From the IMG/VR virus record IMGVR_UViG_3300037502_003770, positions 248,001-312,000 of that record: a stretch of 64,000 nucleotides of DNA. One strand, given 5' to 3'. Positions within the stretch are counted from its first letter, which is position 1. Each line of letters opens with the position of its first letter. The translations under genes and the position numbers were made by a program. The notes below the pieces were generated by a model that saw only the letters and a program-made list of their open reading frames with translations, did not search any database and was not told where the DNA came from. Of this stretch, positions 2,252-52,754 are shown piece by piece.

Positions 2252-2740
2252 ATGGATATAGTAATTATTTTAGAATATCTTGTTTATTATGAATCTAGGT
2301 CTGGGATAAAACAAATGCAAATAAATTTTCGTTTATTTAATAAATATCTCTATGATTATAGATATAATCTTTTAATGATGGATTTTATTAAGGTATATTA
2401 TTCTTGTAATATAAATGAATGGTTTAGAAAGATTATATCTAGTGATGATGAATATTATCTTTTATTAAAAGATATATTAGAAAAAAATATAGAAGTATTT
2501 AATTATTTACCTTATATTACAATATTTAATAACGATAAATTAATATGTAAACTTTTTAAATATAATACAAACCCTTTCAAAGATTTAAAAAAACGTTATA
2601 TAGAACATTTTATAAATAAAAATTCATATTCAAAATTACAATTTTTAAGAAATAAAGAAAGAATTATAAAAATATATAATGAAGGCGATAAATCTATTAA
2701 AGATTATCTACCTGAAAATTTTAAATATATTTTAGATTAA
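2252..2740 (+). CDS. Hypothetical protein; N-terminus loosely resembles the array motif
   Basis: 162 aa, begins MDIVIILEYLVYYE. Confidence 0.55.
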   Translation: MDIVIILEYLVYYESRSGIKQMQINFRLFNKYLYDYRYNLLMMDFIKVYYSCNINEWFRKIISSDDEYYLLLKDILEKNIEVFNYLPYITIFNNDKLICKLFKYNTNPFKDLKKRYIEHFINKNSYSKLQFLRNKERIIKIYNEGDKSIKDYLPENFKYILD

Positions 2741-6117: not shown

Positions 6118-6360
6118 TTATAATAATCGATAATAAATAATTTTATAATTATTATTAGTATGTATTTTATTCTTACTATATAGAGTAACCCATTCATAAT
6201 ATATATCTTTTTTACTTCTATTTAAATCAGACTTTAAACAAAGACAAAAATCTACATGATTAAATATATTAGCAGGGTTGTCAGTACCATCCATATTATT
6301 ATCAATAATATATAAACTTTCTCTATAATAAGTTGTATTTATTTGTATTTCTATTTTCAT
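6118..6360 (-). CDS. Small array-family protein
   Basis: MKIEIQINTTYYRE...KIIYYRLL. Confidence 0.7.
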   Translation of the reverse strand: MKIEIQINTTYYRESLYIIDNNMDGTDNPANIFNHVDFCLCLKSDLNRSKKDIYYEWVTLYSKNKIHTNNNYKIIYYRLL

Positions 6361-6365
6361 ATTTT

Positions 6366-6551
6366 TTAGTAATAAGGTTTGTTTAATACATCTTCAAAAC
6401 ATACATGAGCTTCATTAATAAATGGAATGAAAATAGTAAATTGATAGTTTACAACATGTATACTTTTAATAATAACTAATGATTCGATACAACCATTTAA
6501 AAATAAATATTCATAATAAAAATTATTATTAATTCTAATTAATATTTTCAT
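6366..6551 (-). CDS. Small array-family protein
   Basis: MKILIRINNNFYYE...KPYY. Confidence 0.7.
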   Translation of the reverse strand: MKILIRINNNFYYEYLFLNGCIESLVIIKSIHVVNYQFTIFIPFINEAHVCFEDVLNKPYY

Positions 6552-6557
6552 AATTTT

Positions 6558-6758
6558 TTATTTACCATAATCACGATAGTATTTTACTATATTATATTTA
6601 CCAGGAAAAAAACAAAATTTATTTTCAAAATACTGATAAAATAACCAATCAATAAATTTAAGAAACCTACAATTATATCTTATATCAAAAGAAAATTCTA
6701 AAACAGAATAAAGAAATTCACGATATATAATATGTGTTAAAGTAATATTTATATTCAT
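6558..6758 (-). CDS. Small array-family protein
   Basis: MNINITLTHIIYRE...VKYYRDYGK. Confidence 0.7.
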   Translation of the reverse strand: MNINITLTHIIYREFLYSVLEFSFDIRYNCRFLKFIDWLFYQYFENKFCFFPGKYNIVKYYRDYGK

Positions 6759-6764
6759 AATTTT

Positions 6765-6968
6765 TTATTCGTGATAAGAATAATAAGTATTAACAACTAT
6801 TCTATCTTTTAAGGTAGAATTTTTAAATAATAAAATACTATGATATTTGTTTGTTTTGTTATAAAAATGAATTTTTATATATGAACCAATAAATGAATTT
6901 ATAATATCGTTGTCAATATATATTTCTTTATATTCAAGAAAATAATCAATGTAAATAAATATTTCCAT
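6765..6968 (-). CDS. Small array-family protein
   Basis: MEIFIYIDYFLEYKE...NTYYSYHE. Confidence 0.7.
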   Translation of the reverse strand: MEIFIYIDYFLEYKEIYIDNDIINSFIGSYIKIHFYNKTNKYHSILLFKNSTLKDRIVVNTYYSYHE

Positions 6969-6970
6969 AA

Positions 6971-7156
6971 TTAGAAACTATAATATTTATTACGATTTTT
7001 ACTAGGATATTTAATCATATAAGAATAAATTAAAGAAAATTCATTTAAAATTTTATTATCACTTTTTATTTCACATATAATATATGATATATTAGTATAA
7101 TAATAACATTCAAAATATTTTACATGTATATTATATAAATCAATTAATATTCGCAT
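6971..7156 (-). CDS. Small array-family protein
   Basis: MRILIDLYNIHVKYFE...KYYSF. Confidence 0.7.
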   Translation of the reverse strand: MRILIDLYNIHVKYFECYYYTNISYIICEIKSDNKILNEFSLIYSYMIKYPSKNRNKYYSF

Positions 7157-7379
7157 AAATATTATAATATTTACTGTGGTAACGTAAAAATATAAAATAA
7201 CTAAAATAATAGTTATCTGATAGTAAATCAGGGAATTCTAATTCATCTTTAATAAGAAAGAAATCATCTATAGTATTTATTTTTAATAAATTGATAATTA
7301 CTATAATTTGATTATCATTTCCATTAAATAAATTTTCAAAATAAGTTATAATATTTTCTATTTTAATTAATATTTCCAT
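7140..7379 (-). CDS. Small array-family protein
   Basis: MEILIKIENIITYFE...KYYNIYANIN. Confidence 0.7.
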   Translation of the reverse strand: MEILIKIENIITYFENLFNGNDNQIIVIINLLKINTIDDFFLIKDELEFPDLLSDNYYFSYFIFLRYHSKYYNIYANIN

Positions 7380-7382
7380 AGT

Positions 7383-7580
7383 TTAATAAAATTTATACTG
7401 TTCATCATGTAAACTAAAATATATTTTATTATCGTTTTCCCAATTATATATTATATAGTTAATATAATATTCTTTTCTTAGACGAGTTAAAGGATATAAT
7501 ATTAAATTAGAATTAAATAGAAATCCTGTATCAGAGTTCTCCCTATAATAAGAATTATACGTTTCTATTTCTATTTCCAT
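7383..7580 (-). CDS. Small array-family protein (recent duplicate of the next gene)
   Basis: MEIEIETYNSYYRE...IIYNWENDNKIYFSLHDEQYKFY. Confidence 0.75.
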   Translation of the reverse strand: MEIEIETYNSYYRENSDTGFLFNSNLILYPLTRLRKEYYINYIIYNWENDNKIYFSLHDEQYKFY

Positions 7581-7767
7581 AGTTTAATAGTATTTATATT
7601 CTTTATTATGAGTCGAAAAATATATCTTACCATCATTTCTCCAATTATTATATATGATATATTTCTTTAATATTAAAGATAATTTTAAAATAGATTTAAA
7701 TTTATATTCTTTGTCAGAGCTATATTCCTTATAATAAGAATTATACGTTTCTATTTCTATTTCCATA
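7544..7767. repeat. 38-bp perfect direct repeat covering two array gene starts
   Basis: TATAATAAGAATTATACGTTTCTATTTCTATTTCCATA at 7544-7581 and 7730-7767. Confidence 0.9.
7584..7766 (-). CDS. Small array-family protein (recent duplicate of the previous gene)
   Basis: MEIEIETYNSYYKE...IYNNWRNDGKIYFSTHNKEYKYY. Confidence 0.75.
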   Translation of the reverse strand: MEIEIETYNSYYKEYSSDKEYKFKSILKLSLILKKYIIYNNWRNDGKIYFSTHNKEYKYY

Positions 7768-8541
7768 ATTACTAAAATACTGATATATTTCCACTTTTGT
7801 TAAATAAGGACTTGTAATAAATGATTTTCCTTTAGTAAGGTCTTCATTTTCAAATACATCTTTTATATAAGAAAGATTATTTTTATCAAAAACTAAGACT
7901 TTATAAATCATATTATGTTTATCAGGTGTAGTTATTTTACCAACATTGCTTCCACGTCTAATAATAGAAAAATCGTATTCTAAAGAATCATAATTTTTAT
8001 CACGTTTATCAAATAATTTAAATAAATCACTTTTATTAGAAGTATTGCTTTTGTTTAATAAACCGTTCTTTGGTCTAATATAAATATTAAAACAACAATG
8101 AAGTTTTCTACTATCAGAAAAATTTACTATTCCTAAATCAATACTTTCAACTAAATCAAAATCAAATAAAGTATTTGTATTATTTAATTGAGTGATTGGT
8201 AAAATAAAACCTACTACATCAGATATTTTAACTGATTTTTTAAAAAAACTTCTAGCTAAATTATTTCTTTCACCAAAAGGAGGGTTTCCTATAATTAATC
8301 TACCTTTTTGATAATCAATACCTAATTTAAGAAAATCAGCTTTTATAATAGAATCATCTTCAGGTTCAATATCGTAACCAATACAATCAGGTATTAATTT
8401 TAGAAAAGAACCATTTCCAGCAGAAGGTTCTATTACTTGAGAAATTTCAATATTATGTAAATTACATATTTCATATATTTTATTTATACAAAATTGAGCT
8501 GTTTCTTGAGGAGTATAGTACTTGTCGTTTTCTATTTTCAT
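7741..8541 (-). CDS. DNA adenine methyltransferase (gamma-class motif order)
   Basis: YYTP, SAM motif VIEPSAGNGSF, catalytic IIGNPPFG. Confidence 0.85.
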   Translation of the reverse strand: MKIENDKYYTPQETAQFCINKIYEICNLHNIEISQVIEPSAGNGSFLKLIPDCIGYDIEPEDDSIIKADFLKLGIDYQKGRLIIGNPPFGERNNLARSFFKKSVKISDVVGFILPITQLNNTNTLFDFDLVESIDLGIVNFSDSRKLHCCFNIYIRPKNGLLNKSNTSNKSDLFKLFDKRDKNYDSLEYDFSIIRRGSNVGKITTPDKHNMIYKVLVFDKNNLSYIKDVFENEDLTKGKSFITSPYLTKVEIYQYFSNYGNRNRNV

Positions 8542-8747
8542 AATATTTGTGAATTAATGAATCTACTGTATTTTGCAATTTTGTTTATAATAAAATTAAT
8601 ATTTCTATAAAATTTAATATTTGTTTCACTATGATATAATCTATTATATTGAATAAGCATTGTAAATGAAAATCTATAATTTTTAAAGATACTTAAATTA
8701 TCTATTTCAAAATAAGTAAAGTTTTCAGTTTTAATACTTAAAATCAT
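8538..8747 (-). CDS. Small array-family protein
   Basis: MILSIKTENFTYFE. Confidence 0.7.
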   Translation of the reverse strand: MILSIKTENFTYFEIDNLSIFKNYRFSFTMLIQYNRLYHSETNIKFYRNINFIINKIAKYSRFINSQIL

Positions 8748-8998
8748 TTTATTTTATATGAACGAAGTGTTTTTAATATTTCATCATCTATTAATTTAGT
8801 AGTTTCATATGATATGAGTTTTGACATGAAAGTTTCTATATTATTAGTTTCATAATAAAAAGTTTTAGAATCAATATGATTTATACTATTTTCTTCAATA
8901 TAAACAGTATATTCTAAATCTAATTTTATTAAAGTAATACTAATTTCAAAAGAATTTTCTTTATAAGAAAAATTATTTGTTTTGATTAAAATTTTCAT
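8744..8998 (-). CDS. Small array-family protein
   Basis: MKILIKTNNFSYKEN; shares internal KTFYYE with KTTYYE of its neighbour. Confidence 0.7.
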   Translation of the reverse strand: MKILIKTNNFSYKENSFEISITLIKLDLEYTVYIEENSINHIDSKTFYYETNNIETFMSKLISYETTKLIDDEILKTLRSYKIK

Positions 8999-9263
8999 TT
9001 GTTAACATATTTAAATTAAAATTTAAAGGTACTTCACTAATAAATGAAGGTACTTTTATATTTATTGTACATAGGTGAAAATGGCTTTCATAATAAGTTG
9101 TTTTTTTAGAAAAACTAACAACATTATAGTAATAATTATTATCAAAATATAATCTTATTATTAAACTAGGTAAATGAATAAAAGCACCAATATCATAATT
9201 AGAATTTTCATAATCAAAATTTTCTATATAAGAAAAATTATTTATTTTAATTTGTAATTTCAT
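8973..9263 (-). CDS. Small array-family protein
   Basis: MKLQIKINNFSYIEN. Confidence 0.7.
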   Translation of the reverse strand: MKLQIKINNFSYIENFDYENSNYDIGAFIHLPSLIIRLYFDNNYYYNVVSFSKKTTYYESHFHLCTINIKVPSFISEVPLNFNLNMLTNENFNQNK

Positions 9264-9435
9264 GATTTAAATAATATTTATTTTTTCTATTATTATGTAA
9301 TAAAGTATCCTTTTCATAATATAATCTTATATAATCATATTCAGGTAAAAATATAATTCTACAATAAATGTAATAATATTTAAAATCATAATCTTCACTA
9401 TATTCAAAATTTTCTAAAGTAATTAAAATCAACAT
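9247..9435 (-). CDS. Small array-family protein
   Basis: MLILITLENFEYSE...KYYLNHEITN. Confidence 0.7.
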   Translation of the reverse strand: MLILITLENFEYSEDYDFKYYYIYCRIIFLPEYDYIRLYYEKDTLLHNNRKNKYYLNHEITN

Positions 9436-9439
9436 AATT

Positions 9440-9631
9440 CTAAAGTTTATAATATTTTATATTTTGTAAATCAAATATTAGTTTAGATTTAAAAATATTA
9501 TAATAAGATTTATCATCAATAAAATTTAATAAATTTATAGTAAATTTTATAATTGTAGAACTACCATGTACTAGACGTTCACAATAAAATTTATAATTAT
9601 CAAACATTACTCTAATATTAATATTTTCCAT
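9440..9631 (-). CDS. Small array-family protein (start revised to internal Met)
   Basis: Met13 of the called ORF gives MENINIRVMFDNYKFYCE...IKYYKL and reduces the overlap with the ATP-grasp gene. Confidence 0.6.
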   Translation of the reverse strand: MENINIRVMFDNYKFYCERLVHGSSTIIKFTINLLNFIDDKSYYNIFKSKLIFDLQNIKYYKL

Positions 9632-10400
9632 CAATAACTTGTTTAAATCTTTTATAATAGTTTTCAAAAAAATTCATATTATCAAAACCATAAGTACCTG
9701 TACCAAAAATATCATTTATTTCAATTAAAGATGTTTTACCATTTTTAAGTACTGCAAAATCTAATGTATATAATTCAGGAGTTTTATTATAAGTAATATT
9801 ACTAAAATCTTGAATACATTCCATAACTAATTTTTTATCAAGAAAATAATTATTATCATTTAATGTATCACCAAGATATAATTTAACTGATAAAATTTCA
9901 TTCTTATGAATCCATAATCTATATTCTGATAATATATCAATATGTGTTGAATATAAAAACGGTACTGAAGATTCGATATTACTATCAACTAGTAAATTAA
10001 ATTGTCTTTCATTTTCAATAAATGAACCATTAAATAATTTAGTCATGTTTAAAGGTTTTACAAAAATACCTTCATTATGTTCTTTGATTAATTTATCAAA
10101 ACTGTTTATATTTCCAAGAATTAATTTTCTTTCAAAAAACTTCTCATTCATATAAATCATTTGATTTGTTAAAGAATAAGTTTCTTCAATATTATAATAT
10201 TCTTTAAGTTTTTGAAAACAATATTCAACGCTACCAGAAAAAATATCACCTTCTTGAAAGGAAGATTCATCTGTTGTGTATTCAATATTTGTTTTGTTCC
10301 ACCAATTATATTTTTTAATTGAGGAAATTAAATCAAAAGTATGTTGATAGAGCGGTAATCCGTCTTCATCTTTTTGATATATAAGTTTAATATTTTTCAT
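9618..10400 (-). CDS. ATP-grasp domain protein (R2K/DUF4343-like)
   Basis: IFVKP..TKLFNG, SEYRLWI and YTLDFAV....TSLIEIND..G.YG motifs. Confidence 0.8.
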   Translation of the reverse strand: MKNIKLIYQKDEDGLPLYQHTFDLISSIKKYNWWNKTNIEYTTDESSFQEGDIFSGSVEYCFQKLKEYYNIEETYSLTNQMIYMNEKFFERKLILGNINSFDKLIKEHNEGIFVKPLNMTKLFNGSFIENERQFNLLVDSNIESSVPFLYSTHIDILSEYRLWIHKNEILSVKLYLGDTLNDNNYFLDKKLVMECIQDFSNITYNKTPELYTLDFAVLKNGKTSLIEINDIFGTGTYGFDNMNFFENYYKRFKQVIDGKY

Positions 10401-10608
10401 TAAATATATTAGGATTAAGTTTTAGTTGTAAATTAAACAACCTCCACATATCATATTCTTCATAATAATTATATTCGGACCAAATATGTGAAATAGTACC
10501 ATCAGTAAAATAAAAATCTAATTTTAACGGTAAAAATCTACCTTCTAATTTAATTGTAAAATCTATTTCTGAATAAGTGATGTGATTTGTTTTAATTATT
10601 ATATTCAT
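10387..10608 (-). CDS. Small array-family protein
   Basis: MNIIIKTNHITYSE. Confidence 0.7.
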   Translation of the reverse strand: MNIIIKTNHITYSEIDFTIKLEGRFLPLKLDFYFTDGTISHIWSEYNYYEEYDMWRLFNLQLKLNPNIFNEKY

Positions 10609-10883
10609 TAGAAACTGTTTTTATTATAAAAATTACAAGTATGAAAATTTTTAGAACTAAATATTAGTACAATATCATTAAATATATCCATATATATAAA
10701 CATTGTATTATATTTATAAAGAAAATCATTATCTTTAATATTAAATCCTATACAAGTAAGAAATTTACCATACGAAGTACTATAACTTTCAAGATAATTT
10801 ACAGATTCTTCATATAGTATATTATTAATTGTAATTTGTAAAATAATATATCTACCTGTTTTTTTATTAAAAATACCAGCCAT
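10608..10883 (-). CDS. Small array-family protein (motif offset by about 11 aa)
   Basis: MAGIFNKKTGRY-IILQITINNILYEE...CNFYNKNSF. Confidence 0.65.
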   Translation of the reverse strand: MAGIFNKKTGRYIILQITINNILYEESVNYLESYSTSYGKFLTCIGFNIKDNDFLYKYNTMFIYMDIFNDIVLIFSSKNFHTCNFYNKNSF

Positions 10884-10895
10884 AAAAAAATTTTA

Positions 10896-11165
10896 TTAAG
10901 TTAGTTGATTATAGTTGTAGTAATAATTATTTCCGTAATCTAAATAATAGTAAAATTGATTAAATCTAATAATTATATCTAATTCAATATATTCTCTATT
11001 TTTATCAATAGTTTTATTATTAAGATTATAAATATGATTATTATGATAATAATCAGATGGAAAAGTAAATAATTCTTTATAAAAGTCGATTTTATAAAGA
11101 AAGAAATAAGAATCTACTAATTCTTTATATTCAAAAAAATCATTTGCTATATATAAGTTATTCAT
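10896..11165 (-). CDS. Small array-family protein
   Basis: MNNLYIANDFFEYKE...NNYYYNYNQLT. Confidence 0.65.
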   Translation of the reverse strand: MNNLYIANDFFEYKELVDSYFFLYKIDFYKELFTFPSDYYHNNHIYNLNNKTIDKNREYIELDIIIRFNQFYYYLDYGNNYYYNYNQLT

Positions 11166-11382
11166 AATATTTAAATTTTAAAATTTTATAACCAAAAGTA
11201 CTAATATTAAGAATATCATGATTATCTGATATAGTTGAATTATCTATATCAAATGCTAATCTATTTTTATATTGTAAATCATTTACTGATAATAAAATAC
11301 CAGCATGTATAAATCTATTAAAAATTATACCTGTAGTTTCCTTATAAAGAAAGTTATCAGATAGTTTAATTATTATTTCCAT
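11158..11382 (-). CDS. Small array-family protein
   Basis: MEIIIKLSDNFLYKE...FKYYE. Confidence 0.7.
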   Translation of the reverse strand: MEIIIKLSDNFLYKETTGIIFNRFIHAGILLSVNDLQYKNRLAFDIDNSTISDNHDILNISTFGYKILKFKYYE

Positions 11383-11639
11383 AAAAAATCAATTTTATCT
11401 TTAAAAGTAACATATTCAGAATTGTAATAATCATAAGATTTATGCTGTGTAATTAAATAATTATATTCATAAATAAAATTATGTTCATTTAAAATATTAC
11501 AAGTAATACCCTTATCAACACATTCAATAAAATTAAAATTGAAATATTCTTGTACTTCATACTTATTTAAGTAAACAAGATTAAAAGAATCACGTCTTTC
11601 AACATAGTTTATTTTATTTAAATAAAGTTTTATTTCCAT
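11373..11639 (-). CDS. Small array-family protein
   Basis: MEIKLYLNKINYVE. Confidence 0.7.
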   Translation of the reverse strand: MEIKLYLNKINYVERRDSFNLVYLNKYEVQEYFNFNFIECVDKGITCNILNEHNFIYEYNYLITQHKSYDYYNSEYVTFKDKIDFLWK

Positions 11640-11647
11640 AAAATATT

Positions 11648-11836
11648 TTAGTTATAATAATTAAACTTTTCATAATCGAATAAATCAAATTTTATACAAT
11701 TATAAGACCTTGATTTAAATACGAACTTTTCGGTGGTATCAAATGATAATAAGTATATTATTTTGTAATGTAAAAAAATACCAATACTTGAATTTTCAGT
11801 ATAATTGATTTCTAAAAGTTCAATTGAAATTAACAT
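11648..11836 (-). CDS. Small array-family protein
   Basis: MLISIELLEINYTE...FNYYN. Confidence 0.7.
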   Translation of the reverse strand: MLISIELLEINYTENSSIGIFLHYKIIYLLSFDTTEKFVFKSRSYNCIKFDLFDYEKFNYYN

Positions 11837-12081
11837 AATTGATAAAAATTAAATTGAATATCTTTACGACCATCATAATCACCATCTTTAATTACAGAAT
11901 CAATATAAGATTGAATATAATAAGATTGATTAAAACTATTATAATCAAAAACAAAAATATATTCTTCTGTGATAATAGACCTTGATATTTTAAAAGATAA
12001 ATAAAGTCGAGATTCTATTCTATATTTAGAACAACGTTCAATATATTCATAATTATTTGTTTTTATATCTATTTCTAACAT
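11830..12081 (-). CDS. Small array-family protein
   Basis: MLEIDIKTNNYEYIE...FNFYQLC. Confidence 0.7.
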   Translation of the reverse strand: MLEIDIKTNNYEYIERCSKYRIESRLYLSFKISRSIITEEYIFVFDYNSFNQSYYIQSYIDSVIKDGDYDGRKDIQFNFYQLC

Positions 12082-12082
12082 A

Positions 12083-13927
12083 TTACTTTTTATAAATTTC
12101 TTTAAATTTATTAATTACTTCAGCAAGTACACTACTATTAGAATTATCTATATAATCAATATTATCTACAACTTTGTTAATAACTTTAAGTTTATTATTA
12201 ATAATTTCATAAATTGTCTCATCAATTGTTTCACTAAACAAAAATATAAATACATTTGTATGTTCTTTTTGTCCAGACCTATGTATTCTAGCATAACATT
12301 GTTCATTTTCGGCAGGAACATAGCTTTGTGATAACATAAACATATTCTTTGCTTTAGTTAAAGTAATACCTGCGTTACCAGCCCCAACTGTTAATAATAA
12401 ATTTTGTATAGTATTATTATCTCCTTGAAAAATATCAACAATATCTTGTCTTGTATCGGACTTTATATCACCAGTATATAATTCACTATTATTAAGAATG
12501 GTTTTAAGTTCTTTTAATGAAGATTTATAACAATCAAATATTAAAACTTTTTCATTTTCTTCATTTAAACGTTCAATATATTCTACTAAATATTTAGATT
12601 TTAATTTTGATGTATATTGTCTTAATTCGGTTAAGATTGTTAACGGTGTTTTTTGTTTTTCATTTAAAGAAATATTCATATTACCATTTTTATCTTCTTT
12701 ATAATCACTTAAATTATCCCAATTAGCATCTTTAAATCCACTTTCTATTCTTTTATATTCAGCTTCTTCTGAAGGTGTTAATTCTAAATAAATCTTATTT
12801 ATTGTTAAAGGAGGTAATTCTTTAAGAACATCTTCTTTTTTTACACGAAACATTATCTTTGATAATTTTTCATATATCATATCAAATTTAATATTATCAT
12901 TTATTTGTACGTATGTATTAATCTTATTATTAAAGAACATACCACAATATTCAGTATAGAATTTATTTTTACTTTTAAATTCTATCGGTCTTAATAATTT
13001 AAGTAAATTATATAATTCTTGTACTCTATTTGGAACTGGAGTACCTGTTAATAACATAAGATTTGTATTACTTAAAGATTTCTTAAAACTTTTAGTAAAA
13101 TTCTTAAACATTTGTGTTTTAGAATTCTTTAATTTATGTGCTTCATCAAAAATAATACTATCAACATTAGATAAACCTAAACTTGTTATTTTTTTATTAA
13201 CATCAAAATTTCTTGAAAAATACTCATAGTTAGTAATAATATATTTACTTTCTTCTAAAGAATAACAATTTAACTTAGATTTTGAATTTAAAACAAAAGC
13301 TTTTGAATTTGTAAAGTGATGTATTTCTTTAAGCCAATTAAGTTTTAAAGAACTAGGTACTATAACTAAAACTTTTTTACTTTGATTGATTTCTGATGCT
13401 AATATAGCTAATAATGTTTTACCAGTACCTAAATCGGCAGCTATTAAACTATTTTTTAAATGATTAGCAAATAATGCACCTTTTATTTGGTGATTATATG
13501 GTTTCACACCTTCTTTTAAATATTTAGAATAATCAAACTTTTCCGAAACTTCATCTAATGATTGTAAAAACGTATTTAGATTAGAATCTATTGTTGCAAT
13601 AATTTCTTTGTTTTTATCTTCCTTAATTTTTTTTCTCTTATAGAAATCTAATTTTGAAGAAAAAACTTCTTTATCTTCACTATTTACAAAAGAAAAAAAT
13701 ATATCTTTCCTTGATTTATATTCAGATATTAAACAATATAAATTATATCCGTTAAGATGCCAAGTCTTATCAGAAGGGTTATATTTTTTATCATCAAGTT
13801 TTTTTATATTAAAAACAAGCTCTTCATTATAAAATGACTTTAATGAAAAGGTCTTTTTATCCGAAAGGAGAGTTATGTTTACTTTAAAAATTTCAGTTGC
13901 CGTATGTATATTTGTATTTTCAAACAT
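12083..13927 (-). CDS. SNF2-family ATPase/helicase with a HARP-like N-terminus
   Basis: AADLGTGKT (Walker A), FDEAH, LTGTP..N, GITLT, QCYARIHRSGQ; N-terminal KYNPSDKTW. Confidence 0.92.
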   Translation of the reverse strand: MFENTNIHTATEIFKVNITLLSDKKTFSLKSFYNEELVFNIKKLDDKKYNPSDKTWHLNGYNLYCLISEYKSRKDIFFSFVNSEDKEVFSSKLDFYKRKKIKEDKNKEIIATIDSNLNTFLQSLDEVSEKFDYSKYLKEGVKPYNHQIKGALFANHLKNSLIAADLGTGKTLLAILASEINQSKKVLVIVPSSLKLNWLKEIHHFTNSKAFVLNSKSKLNCYSLEESKYIITNYEYFSRNFDVNKKITSLGLSNVDSIIFDEAHKLKNSKTQMFKNFTKSFKKSLSNTNLMLLTGTPVPNRVQELYNLLKLLRPIEFKSKNKFYTEYCGMFFNNKINTYVQINDNIKFDMIYEKLSKIMFRVKKEDVLKELPPLTINKIYLELTPSEEAEYKRIESGFKDANWDNLSDYKEDKNGNMNISLNEKQKTPLTILTELRQYTSKLKSKYLVEYIERLNEENEKVLIFDCYKSSLKELKTILNNSELYTGDIKSDTRQDIVDIFQGDNNTIQNLLLTVGAGNAGITLTKAKNMFMLSQSYVPAENEQCYARIHRSGQKEHTNVFIFLFSETIDETIYEIINNKLKVINKVVDNIDYIDNSNSSVLAEVINKFKEIYKK

Positions 13928-45656: not shown

Positions 45657-45944
45657 ATGGAAATATCAATTAAAACTAATAATATTACTTATTTTGAATC
45701 AAATAATGTTCATAATATTATTAAATGTTATTTTAGTAATCTTTATCTGATTTATGAATTAGAAATTCTTAAAGATAAGGATTACTTTTTAAGAATAAAA
45801 TTTGAAGATTATGATTGTTTCCTTTCTATTAAAAGAAATTTATTAGAATATAGATATATTAGTATTAAAGATTTTAATATATTATCTATTGGTACATACT
45901 TAAAAAATCCTCAGCACACAAAATACGAAAAACTTATTAAATAA
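45657..45944 (+). CDS. Dispersed member of the small array family
   Basis: MEISIKTNNITYFE matches the array consensus very closely. Confidence 0.7.
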   Translation: MEISIKTNNITYFESNNVHNIIKCYFSNLYLIYELEILKDKDYFLRIKFEDYDCFLSIKRNLLEYRYISIKDFNILSIGTYLKNPQHTKYEKLIK

Positions 45945-46261: not shown

Positions 46262-46512
46262 TGGAAAATTTAGTATTACGATATTTTGAATCTGAAGAAT
46301 TTGTTGGGAATTGGGAACATATAAAACCTTTTAAATATTCTTCAAAAGAAGATTTCTTTTTACATATTATGTATCAACCTATAATTTTAAAAGAATTTAA
46401 TTTATGGGATGAAACAGATTTAACTACATCTGAAAGAATAGAAGAAATACTTGACAATATAGAAGTTTTTACTTTAGAAGAATGGTTTTCACAAAATGAA
46501 ATTAAACTATGA
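46261..46512 (+). CDS. Hypothetical protein
   Basis: 83-aa coupled ORF. Confidence 0.55.
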   Translation: MENLVLRYFESEEFVGNWEHIKPFKYSSKEDFFLHIMYQPIILKEFNLWDETDLTTSERIEEILDNIEVFTLEEWFSQNEIKL

Positions 46513-46880
46513 TAAAAGTGAGGTTTAATTTAGCTAGAGGTAAAAATTATAAAAAATGGAAAATTGATTATGGTAATAATAATGTTACATATCATTCTAT
46601 TGATGAAGTTTTTTTAATTATGAAAAATTGTTTTCTTAAAAATAATACTAAAATAGCTAATAAAATATTTAACGGTGCTAATAAAAATGTTTGTGCTTTT
46701 ATCATATGTGAAAATATCGAAATAATATTAAAAACAGAATCTATCTTAGAAAAAAATGATTTAGAATTAAAATATAATCCTAAAGTAAATCCATATTGGG
46801 TTTTTAATGATGTTAATTATGATAATAAGACTATTAGTGAATTATATACAGTAAGTAACAAAATATATATTAAAAATTAA
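46509..46880 (+). CDS. Hypothetical protein
   Basis: 123 aa; VRFNLARG..WKI and LKYNPKVNPYW blocks. Confidence 0.55.
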   Translation: MIKVRFNLARGKNYKKWKIDYGNNNVTYHSIDEVFLIMKNCFLKNNTKIANKIFNGANKNVCAFIICENIEIILKTESILEKNDLELKYNPKVNPYWVFNDVNYDNKTISELYTVSNKIYIKN

Positions 46881-50262: not shown

Positions 50263-50301
50263 CAAAATATATTTCTAAAAGTATTATCTATATCAAACAA
50301 G

Positions 50302-50373
50302 ACGATTGTAGTTCAGCAGGTAGAACGAAGGTCAGAAAACCTTGAGTCGACAGTTCAAGTCTGTCCTTTCGTT
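50302..50373 (+). ncRNA. Non-canonical tRNA-like RNA, apparently derived from tRNA-Phe(GAA)
   Basis: Intact D arm GTTC-AGCAGGTA-GAAC and T arm GACAG-TTCAAGT-CTGTC. Anticodon arm AAGGT-CAGAAA-ACCTT has a 6-nt loop with no U33. Two T-T mismatches in the acceptor stem; no CCA. Confidence 0.65.
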
Positions 50374-50392
50374 TGTTTGATATTTTAATTTT

Positions 50393-50465
50393 GGTGTTGT
50401 AGCTCAGTTGGTAGAGCGATTGACTGTTAATCAATTGGTCGTAGGTTCAATCCCTACCATCACCG
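50393..50465 (+). tRNA. tRNA-Asn(GTT)
   Basis: Cloverleaf with ATTGA-CTGTTAA-TCAAT anticodon arm and G73; CCA not encoded. Confidence 0.92.
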
Positions 50466-50496
50466 CTTTATTTTAAAAATATAATCTTTCTTTAAT

Positions 50497-51102
50497 ATGA
50501 ATTATTCTAAACATTTATTTATTTCTATTGGTACTGAAATTAACTTTGATTTTCATTCTATTTCTGATGAATATGAATTAAAATTAGTTAATGATTCTAA
50601 AAATAACAATGAATATGCTAGTTTAGTTTATTTAGGTGAATTTTCTGAATTAAAACAATTTACTTTAGGTTATGTAGATTCAACAACAAATGAATTTAAA
50701 AGTAGTACATTTAAAATAGATGATAAATATACAACAGAAAAAGAATTATTAACGATTTTAGTTAAATGTTTAAAACAATTTTATCAAAAATATCCTGTTT
50801 TAAACGGTTATATGTTATTTGATTATATAACTCCTTTTTTAATAAAAAGATTAATTGTTAATGGTTTTTTATTAAATGAATTACCAGCTCATTTAACAGA
50901 TTATACAAAAAAGCCTTGGGAAAAAATAAACTTTTGTTTATATGATTTCTGGAAGTTTGGTAGTTATAATAAATCTGCAACAATGTATATTCTATGTAAA
51001 CTATTTAATGTTGAATTTGATATACATAATATAAATAGTGAGACCTTTCTAAAAAGTTATTTTTCTTTAATTGAGAAAATCTTTAAGAAGAATACTATTT
51101 AA
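50497..51102 (+). CDS. PolB-type 3'-5' exonuclease-like protein, probably catalytically dead
   Basis: EKELL, PFLIKRLIVNG..LP, KPWE and DFWKFG resemble the stand-alone PolB-exo family, but ExoI reads SIGT rather than DIET. Confidence 0.55.
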   Translation: MNYSKHLFISIGTEINFDFHSISDEYELKLVNDSKNNNEYASLVYLGEFSELKQFTLGYVDSTTNEFKSSTFKIDDKYTTEKELLTILVKCLKQFYQKYPVLNGYMLFDYITPFLIKRLIVNGFLLNELPAHLTDYTKKPWEKINFCLYDFWKFGSYNKSATMYILCKLFNVEFDIHNINSETFLKSYFSLIEKIFKKNTI

Positions 51103-51117
51103 ATAAAATATAAACAA

Positions 51118-51191
51118 CGCAGGGTAGAGCAGTGGTCAGCTCGCAAGGCTCATAACCTTTGAGGTCGTTGGTTCGAATCCAATCCCTGCTA
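51118..51191 (+). tRNA. Initiator-type tRNA-Met(CAT)
   Basis: C1:T72 mismatch, A11-U24 pair (GAGC/GCTC), loop CTCATAA; one extra T at the 3' side of the anticodon stem. Confidence 0.85.
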
Positions 51192-51231
51192 CTAATTTAA
51201 ATTAATTTTACTATTTATATAATATATATTT

Positions 51232-52485
51232 ATGTACTCTATTAAAATAAGACTTTATTTAAATAAAAAACAACAAGAAAAATTAGAATCAATTTTTAAT
51301 TCTTGTCGTTTTATTTATAATAAATGTCTTTCTTATAAAATAGATACATATAATAATGAAAAAAGAATTTTAAGTGAATTTGATTTAGTAAATTATTATG
51401 GGCAAGTTTTAAGAAAAGACCCTAATTATAGTTTTTTATTAAATACAAATTCTAAACTACATAATTCTACAATTCTTCATGTTAATTCATCATTTGTCAA
51501 TTTTATTAAACATAATAAAGGTTTTCCTAAGTTTAAAAGTAAAAGAGAAAAAGAAAAAAGTTGTAAATTTCCTAATAAAGCTATTTCTGTTAACTTTTTA
51601 TCAGAAGGAAAGTATTTAAATTTTATAACTGATTTTAATAGAGTAAGGTTTAGAACTTCAAAAAAATATTTAGAAATATTAAAATCTATTAAAAGAGATG
51701 ATATACAAAACATAACTGTTACTAAGAAAAGAAGTGGTATTTATGAAGCTTCCATTTGTTTAAATAAATCAAAACCAAAGGGAAAAAAGTTAAAAGATAC
51801 CAATTCTATTATAGGAATAGATTTAGGTGTTAAACAACTATTAACCCTTTCTGATAATACCTCCTTTCAAAATAAAAAGTTTTATAAGAAAGAGGATATT
51901 AAATTAAAGAAATTACAAAGAAAGCTTTCTAAAAGTATAAAGTGTTTTAAAGAGAGTAAAAATGAAGATAGTAAGTATTTTGGAAAAAATAAAGGTAAAA
52001 ATTTAGAAAAGAACAGATTAAAAGTAGCAAGACTTAATGAAAAAATAACAAACCAAAAAGATACTTATATTCATGAAATAACTTCTAAAATTATAAACGA
52101 AAACCAAGTTATAATAATGGAAGATTTGAATGTACAAGGAATGTTAAAAAATCATAAACTTGCAAGGTCAATTCAAAATGTCTCTTTTTATGAAATAAAG
52201 AGGCAGTTAGAATATAAATCGTCTTTTTATGGAAGAGAATTAATCCTTGTAGATAGGTTTTTTCCATCAAGTAAGACTTGTTCTTGCTGCGGAAGTAAAA
52301 AGAAAGATTTAAAATTAAGTGACCGAGTATACAAATGTAATAACCCTTCATGCGGAGTAGAAATCGATAGAGATTTAAATGCAGCGATTAATATTCGCAA
52401 CGAAGGAATAAAAATAAAAAATAACCTTCACTTAAATGTGAAGGTTATTAAAAAGAAAAGTAGGGGTCCGTTGCTCCGAACATAA
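51232..52485 (+). CDS. tnpB: TnpB RNA-guided endonuclease (IS200/IS605/IS607 family), no adjacent transposase
   Basis: N-terminal HTH (KIRLY..CRFIYN), GFPKFKSK, RuvC D (GIDLG), E (MEDL), D (DRDLNAAINI), zinc ribbon CSCC...C...C. Confidence 0.93.
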   Translation: MYSIKIRLYLNKKQQEKLESIFNSCRFIYNKCLSYKIDTYNNEKRILSEFDLVNYYGQVLRKDPNYSFLLNTNSKLHNSTILHVNSSFVNFIKHNKGFPKFKSKREKEKSCKFPNKAISVNFLSEGKYLNFITDFNRVRFRTSKKYLEILKSIKRDDIQNITVTKKRSGIYEASICLNKSKPKGKKLKDTNSIIGIDLGVKQLLTLSDNTSFQNKKFYKKEDIKLKKLQRKLSKSIKCFKESKNEDSKYFGKNKGKNLEKNRLKVARLNEKITNQKDTYIHEITSKIINENQVIIMEDLNVQGMLKNHKLARSIQNVSFYEIKRQLEYKSSFYGRELILVDRFFPSSKTCSCCGSKKKDLKLSDRVYKCNNPSCGVEIDRDLNAAINIRNEGIKIKNNLHLNVKVIKKKSRGPLLRT

Positions 52486-52596
52486 CGCTTGCGGACTATC
52501 CACTATCGGGGTTATAATTGCAATATATTATAATTAGATATGATAGGTTGAAACAAGAAAAATATAAAACGATGTCTCTCAGGTAACATTTAATAT
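52420..52596 (+). ncRNA. Putative omega-RNA (reRNA) of TnpB; boundaries uncertain
   Basis: GC-richer structured tract overlapping the tnpB 3' end: 12-bp hairpin at 52420-52449, GTAGGG..CCGAA..ACGCTTGCGGACTATC pairing with GATAGGTTGAAACAAG, inner TTATAAT/ATTATAA stem. Confidence 0.6.
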
Positions 52597-52668
52597 GCTC
52601 GGTTGGTCTAACGGTCATGACGACTCACTTTCTATGAGTAAATAAGAGTTCGATTCTCTTATCGAGTA
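52597..52668 (+). tRNA. tRNA-Glu(TTC) with U37
   Basis: Acceptor GCTCGGT/ATCGAGT, anticodon arm ACTCA-CTTTCTA-TGAGT, T arm AAGAG-TTCGATT-CTCTT. Confidence 0.85.
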
Positions 52669-52679
52669 CAATAAAATAC

Positions 52680-52754
52680 GGAGTATTGGTATAATGGTTA
52701 TTACGCTTCACTGTCTATGAAGTAATACGAGTTCGATTCTCGTATACTCCGCCA
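52680..52754 (+). tRNA. tRNA-Asp(GTC) with U37
   Basis: Acceptor GGAGTAT/ATACTCC, anticodon arm CTTCA-CTGTCTA-TGAAG, G73, encoded CCA. Confidence 0.88.

What the first reader, a model, noticed from the sequence alone, without database searches (positions are those of the whole stretch)
7371..9263. Array caught expanding: recent tandem duplications keep the leader while the core diverges
Seen: a perfect 38-bp repeat spans the starts of two neighbours (7544-7581 and 7730-7767, both MEIEIETYNSYY). An 18-bp junction repeat TATTTCCATAGTTTAATA joins a stop to the next start at 7371-7388 and 7572-7589. The two proteins keep both ends (W.ND.KIYFS.H...YK.Y) but differ in the middle, including indels. 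A second close pair is 8744-8998 and 8973-9263 (NNFSY.EN, KT.YYE). Inference: a gene accordion in which the conserved leader DNA acts as a recombination handle for duplicating or shuffling units, with fast diversification of the core.
Basis: partly seen in the sequence, partly recalled or inferred. Interest (0 to 1): 0.7.

Follow-up and report, generated by a model that had tools for sequence, protein, structure and literature searches.

The report
Fast-shuffling small-gene family in jumbo phage
The repeats mark one unit of a tandem array from a roughly 87-member, lineage-specific family of small proteins in a 313-kb T4-like jumbo phage; close relatives differ by whole units at exactly this spot, so the array does turn over, but by recombination between old, diverged copies rather than by a fresh duplication.

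Summary
The 38-bp perfect repeat (7544-7581 / 7730-7767) and the 18-bp junction repeat are real. The 38-mer is the longest exact match among all 3,741 gene pairs of the family. The window lies in a 312,694-bp, 22% GC phage with T4-type capsid protein and prohead protease. The array (6118-12081, minus strand) holds about 20 of roughly 87 genes. These share an N-terminal module M-x-I-x-I-x3-N-x2-Y-x-E (Tyr and Glu invariant), and most end in K-Y-Y. The family has no Pfam, PHROG or database relatives outside this lineage. Two relatives that are 95-99% identical lack exactly the 201-bp unit 7383-7583. A third has one unit where this phage has four. Another lacks 613 bp. One gene is replaced outright, and one has a 23%-diverged core behind an unchanged leader. 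So copy number and content do vary. But the flagged pair is not a recent duplicate: the cores are about 60% identical, with indels. The best reading is unit-wise gain, loss and replacement by recombination at the conserved gene ends, with protein-level constraint on the leader. Protein function is unknown. This is a new variant of T4-type hyperplastic regions and giant-phage paralog families, unusual in scale.

The parts
7383..7580 (-). Gene B, 65-aa family member. With its 3-nt spacer (7383-7583, 201 bp) it is the unit present here and absent from relatives L009 and L010.
   Evidence: found only in this genome among 5.8 billion protein clusters
7584..7766 (-). Gene A, 60-aa family member and closest paralogue of B (54% aa). 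It has an orthologue in the relatives (92% aa). Its start overlaps the last 26 nt of the methyltransferase gene.
7544..7581 (.). Copy 1 of the 38-bp perfect repeat (5' end of gene B)
7730..7767 (.). Copy 2 of the 38-bp perfect repeat (5' end of gene A)
7371..7388 (.). 18-bp junction repeat, copy 1 (end of B, spacer, start of gene 7140-7379)
7572..7589 (.). 18-bp junction repeat, copy 2 (end of A, spacer, start of B)
6118..6360 (-). Last array gene (80 aa). In the relatives a different 64-aa family member (31% aa identity) sits here between conserved flanks.
6366..7379 (-). Five family genes (6366-6551, 6558-6758, 6765-6968, 6971-7156, 7140-7379). 6450-6899 is identical to the relatives. In run X2, 6987-7757 (four units) is replaced by 173 nt.
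7741..8541 (-). N6-adenine DNA methyltransferase-like gene (NPPF motif) inserted in the array. It is absent from the array of the more distant 14-kb relative.
8538..8747 (-). Family member, 69 aa
8744..8998 (-). Family member, 84 aa. Its first 66 nt differ at one position from the relatives, but the core is 23% diverged (61% aa identity).
8973..9667 (-). Three family members (8973-9263, 96 aa; 9247-9435, 62 aa; 9440-9631, 63 aa from its ATG)
9618..10400 (-). ATP-grasp enzyme of the R2K clade (PF18299, PF14243) embedded in the array
   Evidence: 98% aa identical in L009
10387..12081 (-). Upstream half of the array: seven small genes (10387-10608, 10608-10883, 10896-11165, 11158-11382, 11373-11639, 11648-11836, 11830-12081). 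A relative in run X2 lacks 11035-11647 (613 bp).
12083..13927 (-). SNF2-type helicase. Its stop abuts the first array gene, so the array is probably co-transcribed with it.
45657..45944 (+). Solitary family member (95 aa) between the ribonucleotide reductase small subunit and thioredoxin. It is 91% aa identical in a relative whose reductase subunit is 100% identical.
2252..2740 (+). 162-aa protein that carries the same N-terminal module on a different body

Best explanation
The finding is one spot in a hyperplastic small-gene array of a 313-kb, 22% GC, T4-like jumbo phage from groundwater and freshwater metagenomes. The array belongs to a lineage-specific family of about 87 genes, some 19% of the phage's genes, spread over at least ten arrays. 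Members share a 14-residue N-terminal module (M-x-I-x-I-x3-N-x2-Y-x-E), predicted to form a beta-hairpin, with Tyr and Glu invariant. Most are 55-100 aa and end in K-Y-Y; about 19 carry the module on longer bodies. SHOWN: the arrays change by whole units. Closely related phages differ by presence or absence of single units (gene B here), by blocks of two to four units, by outright replacement of a unit with another family member, and by exchange of a gene's core behind an unchanged leader. SHOWN: the genes are under purifying selection (pN/pS 0.33), weaker than on neighbouring enzymes (0.09). The leader is constrained as protein. INFERRED: these changes come from homologous or short-homology recombination between co-infecting relatives or between neighbouring units. 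Crossovers would fall in the only stretches that stay alike: the first 40-65 nt, and the Y-Y-stop-spacer-ATG junction. The A/B pair is best read as two old, diverged alleles or paralogues placed or kept in tandem. Their 38-nt identity is then a recombination or gene-conversion tract, not the trace of a fresh duplication. INFERRED, weaker: the proteins are accessory early or middle proteins (host takeover or anti-defence), co-transcribed with helicase, methyltransferase and nucleotide-metabolism genes. The N-terminal module would be a shared functional tag or structural core.
For: Genome identity: (T4-type prohead protease PF03420 and gp23-type capsid protein PF07068). Family reality: 71 small genes carry the N-motif against 7.5 +/- 2.7 in shuffles; 50 against 1.3 carry N- and C-motif together; the HMM has no hits in shuffled proteins. 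55 members pass the iterated HMM and 19 longer proteins carry the module. Tyr is present in 69/69 and Glu in 68/69. The fixed-register DNA pattern hits 41 times, with 0 in the reversed control. Turnover: the 201-bp unit is absent from L009 and L010. Run X2 has 173 nt in place of 771 nt, and a 613-bp gap elsewhere. A minor variant contig in the source-like run has a different B core and a different A 5' part. Gene 6118-6360 is replaced. Gene 8744-8998 has a diverged core and a conserved leader. A more distant relative has 15 small genes after the ATP-grasp gene and no methyltransferase. Selection. Protein-level leader constraint. Old age of the paralogues. The tandem is real in unitigs.
Against: Direction of the 201-bp event is unresolved because there is no outgroup with DNA. 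B occurs nowhere else in assembled data, which fits a gain in this lineage. How a 60%-identical core could arise by gain is inferred, not shown. Breakpoints at conserved gene ends are partly unavoidable, since diverged units can only be aligned there. Logan contigs are not reads: depths (B 10.3, A 15.6, flanks 12.9-16.1) and the depth-3 variant contig are weak population evidence. Timing of expression and function are untested. Both AlphaFold models are of low confidence (pLDDT about 60) and no fold match was found.
Confidence: 0.7

Rival explanations
1. One reading: B is a very recent tandem duplicate of A. The leader stayed identical while the core diversified extremely fast, as in a gene accordion with adaptive divergence.
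For: B is absent from the close relatives and from all other assembled data. The 38 nt are identical and the junction nearly so. A is B's closest paralogue. Small genes evolve faster than their neighbours (pN/pS 0.33 against 0.09).
Against: The A and B cores are about 60% identical with four indels, while the whole region differs from L009 by only about 5%. Where a core is divergent between orthologues, synonymous divergence rises too (pS 0.24 against about 0.10). That points to imported older sequence, not to selection on new mutations. No reverse transcriptase or diversity-generating retroelement is present, and changes involve all bases and indels. Nearly all family pairs are ancient.
Confidence: 0.12
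2. The 14-residue N-terminal module is a capsid-targeting and propeptide tag like that of the T-even internal proteins. The T4-type prohead protease would cleave it after the invariant Glu (Y-x-E). The family would then be a large, shuffled set of proteins packaged in the head and injected with the DNA.
For: The phage encodes a gp21-type prohead protease and a gp23-type capsid protein. T4 internal proteins share only a short N-terminal targeting sequence and are otherwise highly diverse (PMC3012670). The T4 protease cuts after Glu at I/L-x-E, and SPN3US paralogues gp53 and gp54 have identical 15-residue N-termini with x-x-E sites while the rest has diverged (PMC5694885). Here the Glu is invariant, and the same module sits on unrelated bodies, including DUF4116-repeat proteins.
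Against: P3 is Tyr, not the Ile or Leu of T4 sites. About 87 cargo genes would be without precedent. The arrays sit in operons with helicase, methyltransferase, ribonucleotide reductase and thioredoxin genes, a typical early or middle context. The proteins are very hydrophobic and aromatic (Tyr 12%, Phe 9%, Ile 13%), unlike the charged T4 internal proteins. AlphaFold places the module inside a beta-sheet rather than as a free tag. The conserved K-Y-Y end remains unexplained.
Confidence: 0.13
3. The conserved 5' stretch is a DNA- or RNA-level element, such as a promoter, translation-initiation signal or regulator site. The protein motif would be a by-product, and the small ORFs would be largely meaningless.
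For: The genes are packed with 0-7 nt spacers and no evident Shine-Dalgarno sequences, so translational coupling is likely. Codon 3 favours ATA more than the genome average.
Against: Nucleotide conservation is confined to the codons for Met1, Ile3, Ile5, Tyr12 and Glu14. The intervening codons vary at all three positions. Orthologues show purifying selection (pN/pS 0.33). A second conserved motif (K-Y-Y) lies at the C-terminus. The promoter scan is at background level and no terminators were found.
Confidence: 0.05
4. A RiPP-type cluster: the small genes are precursor peptides with a conserved leader and variable core, modified by the embedded ATP-grasp ligase and methyltransferase.
For: The shape is conserved N-terminus plus variable core, in many tandem copies, with an ATP-grasp gene in the array.
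Against: The ATP-grasp enzyme is of the R2K clade (PF18299, PF14243), not the graspetide or microviridin type. The methyltransferase matches DNA methyltransferases and has an NPPF motif. Only one of at least ten arrays has these enzymes. The C-terminus is conserved too. The proteins are 55-100 aa and predicted beta-rich, and the module also sits on 130-266-aa proteins.
Confidence: 0.03
5. Assembly artefact: two alleles of one gene from co-occurring strains were stitched in tandem through the shared 38-mer.
For: The source-like run contains a minor variant strain, and the graph breaks at the 38-mer.
Against: A unitig at depth 15.6 runs from the unique core and tail of A into the A/B-type leader. 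The next gene's leader differs from that leader at its 10th base. Another unitig runs from that leader through the core of B into the next gene. The 38-mer depth (24.1) is about the sum of the two.
Confidence: 0.03

Closest known systems
Hyperplastic regions of T4-type phages with modular shuffling at PeSL cassettes (Arbiol et al. 2010, PMC2839356; PMC4122927)
   Same: T4-like genome. Clusters of small non-essential genes of unknown function. Insertions, deletions and replacements of single genes between phages that are about 95% identical. Recombination at short conserved sequences that flank each gene.
   Different: There are no intergenic promoter and stem-loop cassettes here: spacers are 0-7 nt and the scan found no terminator-like sites. 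The conserved stretches are the coding ends of the genes themselves. The genes are all paralogues of one family, not unrelated ORFans.
T-even internal proteins that share only a capsid-targeting sequence (PMC3012670; Mullaney and Black 1996 as cited in PMC5694885)
   Same: A short conserved N-terminal leader ending at a Glu, followed by highly diverse small proteins. T4-type prohead protease present. The locus is variable between relatives.
   Different: The leader sequence is unrelated and P3 is Tyr. About 87 genes against a handful. Early-type operon context. Hydrophobic and aromatic composition. A conserved C-terminal K-Y-Y. Packaging and cleavage are untested.
Head paralogue families of giant phages SPN3US, phiKZ and 201phi2-1 (PMC5694885)
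   Same: Tandem paralogue families whose size varies widely between related phages (2 to 20 members). The paralogues gp53 and gp54 keep identical 15-residue N-termini while the rest has diverged.
   Different: No sequence relation. Those are 30-kDa and larger virion proteins, shown by mass spectrometry. The family here is four times larger, its members are much smaller, and virion location is unknown.
Poxvirus gene accordions (K3L amplification; from my own knowledge, Elde et al. 2012, not checked here)
   Same: Copy-number change of a tandem gene array in a large DNA virus.
   Different: Accordion copies are near-identical and transient. Here the units are old and diverged (mostly below 30% aa identity), and change is by single-unit indels and replacement between lineages.

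Membership tests
T4-type hyperplastic region with PeSL-mediated modular shuffling | T4-like phage backbone | tested here: met
   gp23-type capsid protein PF07068 (198 bits) and gp21-type protease PF03420 (97 bits) in the same genome
T4-type hyperplastic region with PeSL-mediated modular shuffling | Gene-sized insertions, deletions and replacements between closely related phages, clustered among small accessory genes | tested here: met
   201-bp, 613-bp and 771-to-173-nt differences, one gene replacement and one core replacement, against 98.8% identical flanks
T4-type hyperplastic region with PeSL-mediated modular shuffling | Intergenic promoter plus stem-loop terminator cassettes (PeSLs) flanking the shuffled genes | tested here: not met
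   Genes abut or overlap (spacers 0-7 nt). No terminator-like sites, and promoter-like sites at background level (128 against 108 +/- 12)
T-even internal proteins with capsid-targeting sequence | Short conserved N-terminal leader on otherwise diverse small proteins | tested here: met
   M-x-I-x-I-x3-N-x2-Y-x-E on about 87 proteins; cores mostly not alignable
T-even internal proteins with capsid-targeting sequence | Leader ends in a prohead-protease site (I/L-x-E in T4) | tested here: inconclusive
   Invariant Y-x-E at residues 12-14. P1 Glu fits; P3 Tyr is not the T4 consensus. The specificity of this phage's protease is unknown.
T-even internal proteins with capsid-targeting sequence | Proteins are packaged in the head and processed | not testable with these tools
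   Needs virion proteomics. The operon context with helicase and ribonucleotide reductase genes argues for early expression.
Gene accordion (recent tandem amplification) | Adjacent copies near-identical over their whole length | tested here: not met
   The best pair, A/B, is 54% aa identical, with a core of about 60% nt identity and four indels. Only 30 of 3,741 pairs reach BLASTP E<1e-3.
Gene accordion (recent tandem amplification) | Copy number varies between close relatives or within a population | tested here: met
Graspetide-type RiPP cluster | ATP-grasp ligase of the microviridin or graspetide type next to precursors with Thr/Ser and Asp/Glu core motifs | tested here: not met
   The ATP-grasp enzyme is of the R2K clade (PF18299 at 5e-26, PF14243). 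Cores are rich in Tyr, Phe, Ile and Asn. Most arrays lack the enzyme.
Diversity-generating retroelement target | Reverse transcriptase, and a template/variable repeat pair with adenine-specific changes | tested here: not met
   No PF00078 match in the genome, with positive controls. A/B differences involve all bases and indels.

The most novel reading that the evidence does not exclude
About one gene in five of this T4-like jumbo phage carries the same 14-residue N-terminal tag ending in an invariant Y-x-E. The tag could be a capsid-targeting and protease-processing signal. The phage would then load its head with a very large arsenal of small injected proteins, reshuffled at population level through unit-wise recombination in the arrays. 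That would be a scaled-up, combinatorial version of the T4 internal-protein system.
Probability: 0.13. Interest if true: 0.85.

Novelty: new variant of a known kind. Interest (0 to 1): 0.58.

Why it matters
Hyperplastic regions of small ORFan genes are thought to be where large phages adapt to hosts and defences, but the units are usually unrelated and their turnover is hard to follow. Here a single recognisable family supplies about 87 units. Gain, loss, replacement and core exchange can therefore be read directly between near-identical genomes. At least four structural states of one 1-kb segment already exist in public metagenomes. That makes the lineage a natural system for measuring rates and breakpoints of gene-cassette turnover in phages. 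It could also show what a shared 14-residue N-terminal module does on dozens of otherwise unrelated small proteins. A family that fills about a fifth of a phage's gene set is, to my knowledge, unusual for tailed phages and is closer to the paralogue expansions of giant eukaryotic viruses.

Tried and rejected
1. Pfam and PHROGs on ten array proteins gave nothing for the small proteins.
2. A profile of 20 members searched against 1.84 billion representative proteins gave four hits, all this phage or its two near relatives.
3. A word-based search with gene B found only itself.
4. The ESM Atlas gave only chance-level leads, score 0.86 or less.
5. Two AlphaFold2 runs with 61-63 paralogues as the alignment gave pLDDT about 60. 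Only the N-terminal hairpin or beta-meander was moderately confident. Foldseek against PDB had a best E of 0.58. No fold is assigned.
6. The search for related loci with the SNF2 helicase and with the relative's ATP-grasp protein found nothing in IMG/VR or JGI contigs.
7. The capsid protein found 598 IMG/VR relatives at 51% identity or less. None carries the family near its capsid gene. Four large relatives have no copy of the motif pattern, and five have no profile match. The control shows the profile test is weak.
8. DNA of the 14-kb intermediate relative (ERZ22067504) could not be fetched, so the 201-bp event could not be polarised.
9. Megablast against the deposited phage collection gave no match.
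10. The promoter and terminator scan was uninformative in 22% GC DNA.
11. A degenerate GIY-YIG nuclease origin of the N-terminal hairpin was considered. It was dropped because the spacing differs and Pfam gives no signal.
12. The RiPP, diversity-generating retroelement and assembly-artefact readings were rejected, as listed under the rival explanations.
Full report
**1. Where the window lies**

The window is bases 248001-312000 of a 312,694-bp IMG/VR virus record, estimated 96% complete. Its GC content is 22%. The record is JGI 3300037502 Ga0310151_0000017. Contigs of a subsurface-metagenome run are 100% identical to it.

The genome encodes a T4 gp23-type major capsid protein (PF07068, 198 bits) and a gp21-type prohead protease (PF03420, 97 bits). 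It is therefore a distant T4-like jumbo phage. The nearest capsid proteins in IMG/VR are 51% identical or less. Table 11 gives 93% coding density, so no other genetic code is needed.

**2. The observation**

- The 38-mer (7544-7581 and 7730-7767) covers the first 12 codons (MEIEIETYNSYY) of two adjacent minus-strand genes. I call them A (7584-7766, 60 aa) and B (7383-7580, 65 aa).
- The 18-mer (7371-7388 and 7572-7589) reads, on the coding strand, Tyr-stop-ACT-ATG-GAA-ATA. That is the end of one gene, a 3-nt spacer and the start of the next.
- A and B also share the C-terminal stretch W.ND.KIYFS.H...YK.Y. They differ in between, with four indels.

The 38-mer is the longest exact match among all 3,741 pairs of family genes in the genome; the next longest is 29 nt. 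Outside the tract, A and B are about 64% identical, so the heterogeneity is real.

It is not significant by BLASTP.

The tandem is not a misassembly. One unitig of the source-like run links the unique tail of A to an A/B-type leader. Another links the core of B to the next gene. The 38-mer unitig has depth 24.1, about the sum of 15.6 and 10.3.

**3. What the array is**

From 6118 to 12081, about 20 small genes (60-96 aa) lie head to tail on the minus strand, with spacers of 0-7 nt or short overlaps. They sit directly behind an SNF2 helicase gene (12083-13927). Two enzyme genes interrupt them: an NPPF-motif DNA methyltransferase (7741-8541) and an R2K-clade ATP-grasp enzyme (9618-10400).

All small proteins begin M-x-I-x-I-x3-N-x2-Y-x-E, and most end K-Y-Y within a few residues of the stop. 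In the alignment Y12 and E14 are invariant.

The family is genome-wide.

- 71 genes of 45-125 aa carry the N-motif, against 7.5 +/- 2.7 in composition-preserving shuffles.
- 50 against 1.3 carry both the N- and the C-motif.
- The family HMM hits no shuffled protein.
- 55 members pass an iterated HMM.
- A further 19 proteins of 130-266 aa carry the same N-terminal module on other bodies, some with DUF4116 repeats.

That makes about 87 of roughly 459 genes, in arrays at 20-38, 62-76, 86-92, 99-104, 121-122, 208-211 and 254-260 kb, plus solitary copies.

Aligned on the motif, Tyr is present in 69/69 and Glu in 68/69. The proteins are rich in Tyr (12%), Phe (9%) and Ile (13%) and poor in Ala, Gly and Pro.

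Nucleotide conservation in the leader is limited to codons 1, 3, 5, 12 and 14. The other codons vary at all three positions. The constraint therefore acts on the protein, not on a DNA element.

**4. Relatives and distribution**

Pfam and PHROGs have nothing for the small proteins. A profile search of 1.84 billion representative proteins returns only this phage and two near relatives.

A fixed-register DNA pattern for the motif hits 41 times in this genome. It hits zero times in the reversed control and zero times in four 229-296-kb relatives with 46-51% capsid identity. The family is thus confined to this phage's immediate lineage, as far as these tools can see.

AlphaFold2 with 61-63 paralogues as the alignment gives only pLDDT of about 60. 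It shows a moderately confident N-terminal hairpin (residues 3-6 and 11-14). In a 95-aa member it shows a five-strand meander followed by a helix. Foldseek finds no fold match.

**5.

Two contigs from other samples are 95-99% identical over 11 kb. They are L009, a 51-kb ENA scaffold, and L010, a JGI contig.

*The 201-bp unit.* Both contigs lack exactly 201 bp, which is gene B plus its spacer (7383-7583). They run from the A gene straight into gene 7140-7379. Their single gene is A-like over about 170 nt. Its last 15 nt (TATAGATTTTATTAA) are closer to the end of B (one mismatch) than to the end of A (three mismatches). If the event was a deletion, this places the crossover in the conserved 3' end or junction, not in the 38-bp leader. 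Two positions in the 38-mer (GAAACG here, AAAACA in the relatives) are shared by our A and B. That hints at conversion between them, but it cannot be polarised without an outgroup.

*Other differences from L009 and L010.*
- The last array gene (6118-6360) is replaced by another family member of 31% aa identity, between conserved flanks.
- Gene 8744-8998 keeps its first 66 nt (one change) while its core is 23% diverged.
- 6450-6899 is identical, and the 6 kb downstream is 98.8% identical.

*Other runs.*
- In run X2 a 21-kb contig joins the methyltransferase end (7758) to 6986 with 173 nt in between instead of 771. That is one unit where this phage has four.
- Another X2 contig skips 11035-11647 (613 bp).
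- The source-like run holds a depth-3 variant contig. It has a different B core (71 nt instead of 86) and a different 5' part of A, and it is preceded by another family-type gene end.
- A more distant relative (ATP-grasp enzyme 75% identical) has 15 small genes after the ATP-grasp gene and no methyltransferase. Here there are 13 small genes plus the methyltransferase, and in L009 there are 12.

Array order and copy number are therefore not invariant.

**6. How divergence is distributed**

Between orthologues, the first 42 nt differ at 2.6% of sites, the core at 5.7% (Fisher p=0.002) and the last 21 nt at 5.5%.

| Gene set | pN/pS |
|---|---|
| Twelve small orthologues, pooled | 0.33 |
| The two enzymes in the array | 0.09 |
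| Flanking genes | 0.04 |

The small genes are real and constrained, but their proteins evolve three to four times faster than the array enzymes. In the hot patch of 8744-8998, synonymous divergence rises as well (0.24 against about 0.10). That points to import of an older allele rather than a burst of selected mutations.

**7. Interpretation**

The 'recent duplication' part does not hold.

- The A and B cores are far more diverged than the time since the split from the relatives allows.
- Almost all family pairs are ancient.
- No reverse transcriptase is present that could drive targeted hypermutation.

The simplest account is recombination between co-infecting relatives or neighbouring units, with crossovers in the few stretches that remain similar. 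This would stack, remove or swap whole units, or swap cores. The 38-nt tract would then be a conversion or crossover tract. Since alleles with identical leaders and diverged cores demonstrably circulate (8744-8998), stacking two such alleles would produce exactly the A/B picture. This step is inferred, not shown.

**8. Comparison with known systems**

- *T4-type hyperplastic regions.* The behaviour matches these regions, in which recombination at short conserved cassettes (PeSLs) inserts, deletes and replaces small genes between 95%-identical phages (PMC2839356). Here there are no intergenic cassettes. The homologous stretches are the coding ends of one large paralogue family.
- *T-even internal proteins.* A conserved N-terminal leader on diverse small proteins recalls these proteins, which share only a capsid-targeting sequence (PMC3012670).
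- *SPN3US head paralogues.* Those family sizes vary from 2 to 20, and gp53 and gp54 keep identical 15-residue N-termini with x-x-E protease sites (PMC5694885). Because this phage has a T4-type protease and an invariant Y-x-E, a targeting and processing tag is a live hypothesis. I give it about 13%. Against it stand the early-type operon context, the hydrophobic composition, the conserved C-terminus and the sheer number of genes.
- The RiPP, DNA-element, retroelement and artefact readings are rejected on the tests listed under the rival explanations.

**9. Verdict**

The thing itself is a lineage-specific, hyper-expanded small-protein family whose arrays turn over by unit-wise recombination. 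That is a new variant of known phage hyperplastic regions and paralogue families, unusual in scale. The function of the proteins is unknown.

Noticed in passing
genome 157-198 kb and 6-10 kb (outside the window); window 2252-2740 for one N-motif protein: A second expanded family: 35 DUF4116 (PF13475) repeat matches in at least 15 ORFs of the phage. Several of the longer proteins with the N-terminal module carry DUF4116 repeats.
   Followed up: partly
window 46509-46880: A 123-aa gene between the thioredoxin-adjacent gene and a 324-aa gene is present here but absent from the 96%-identical relative L011. This is another single-gene indel, not of the family.
   Followed up: partly
L022:1802-3040 (genome about 22.2-23.4 kb): A TnpB/OrfB_IS605 (Cas12f1-like) gene sits inside one of the other family arrays.
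   Followed up: no
genome 69.7-71.1 kb, 76.3-77.6 kb and about 86.9 kb (L020:4792-6102, L020:11304-12611): Opposite-strand ORFs of about 435 aa, with no Pfam match, have ends about 90% identical and recur beside the arrays. They may be mobile or duplicated elements.
   Followed up: partly
window 50301-52754: A cluster of five tRNA genes (Asn, Met, Glu, Asp and one with an odd anticodon loop).
   Followed up: no
L020 (genome 65-85 kb): The phage carries ABC-transporter permease and ATPase genes, an OmpA-domain protein, an AAA ATPase and a ClpS homologue, interleaved with family arrays. A more distant relative (L008) encodes SmpB.
   Followed up: no
window 10896-11165: This 89-aa gene may be a fusion of two units. 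A relative in run X2 starts a shorter gene (new ATG, MVIK...) at about its codon 44, and the second half has its own N...Y.E and Y-Y motifs.
   Followed up: partly
window 7741-7766: The methyltransferase ORF ends inside the leader of gene A, with a 26-nt overlap in another frame. Its last residues are therefore dictated by the repeat; the arrangement is the same in the relatives.
   Followed up: partly
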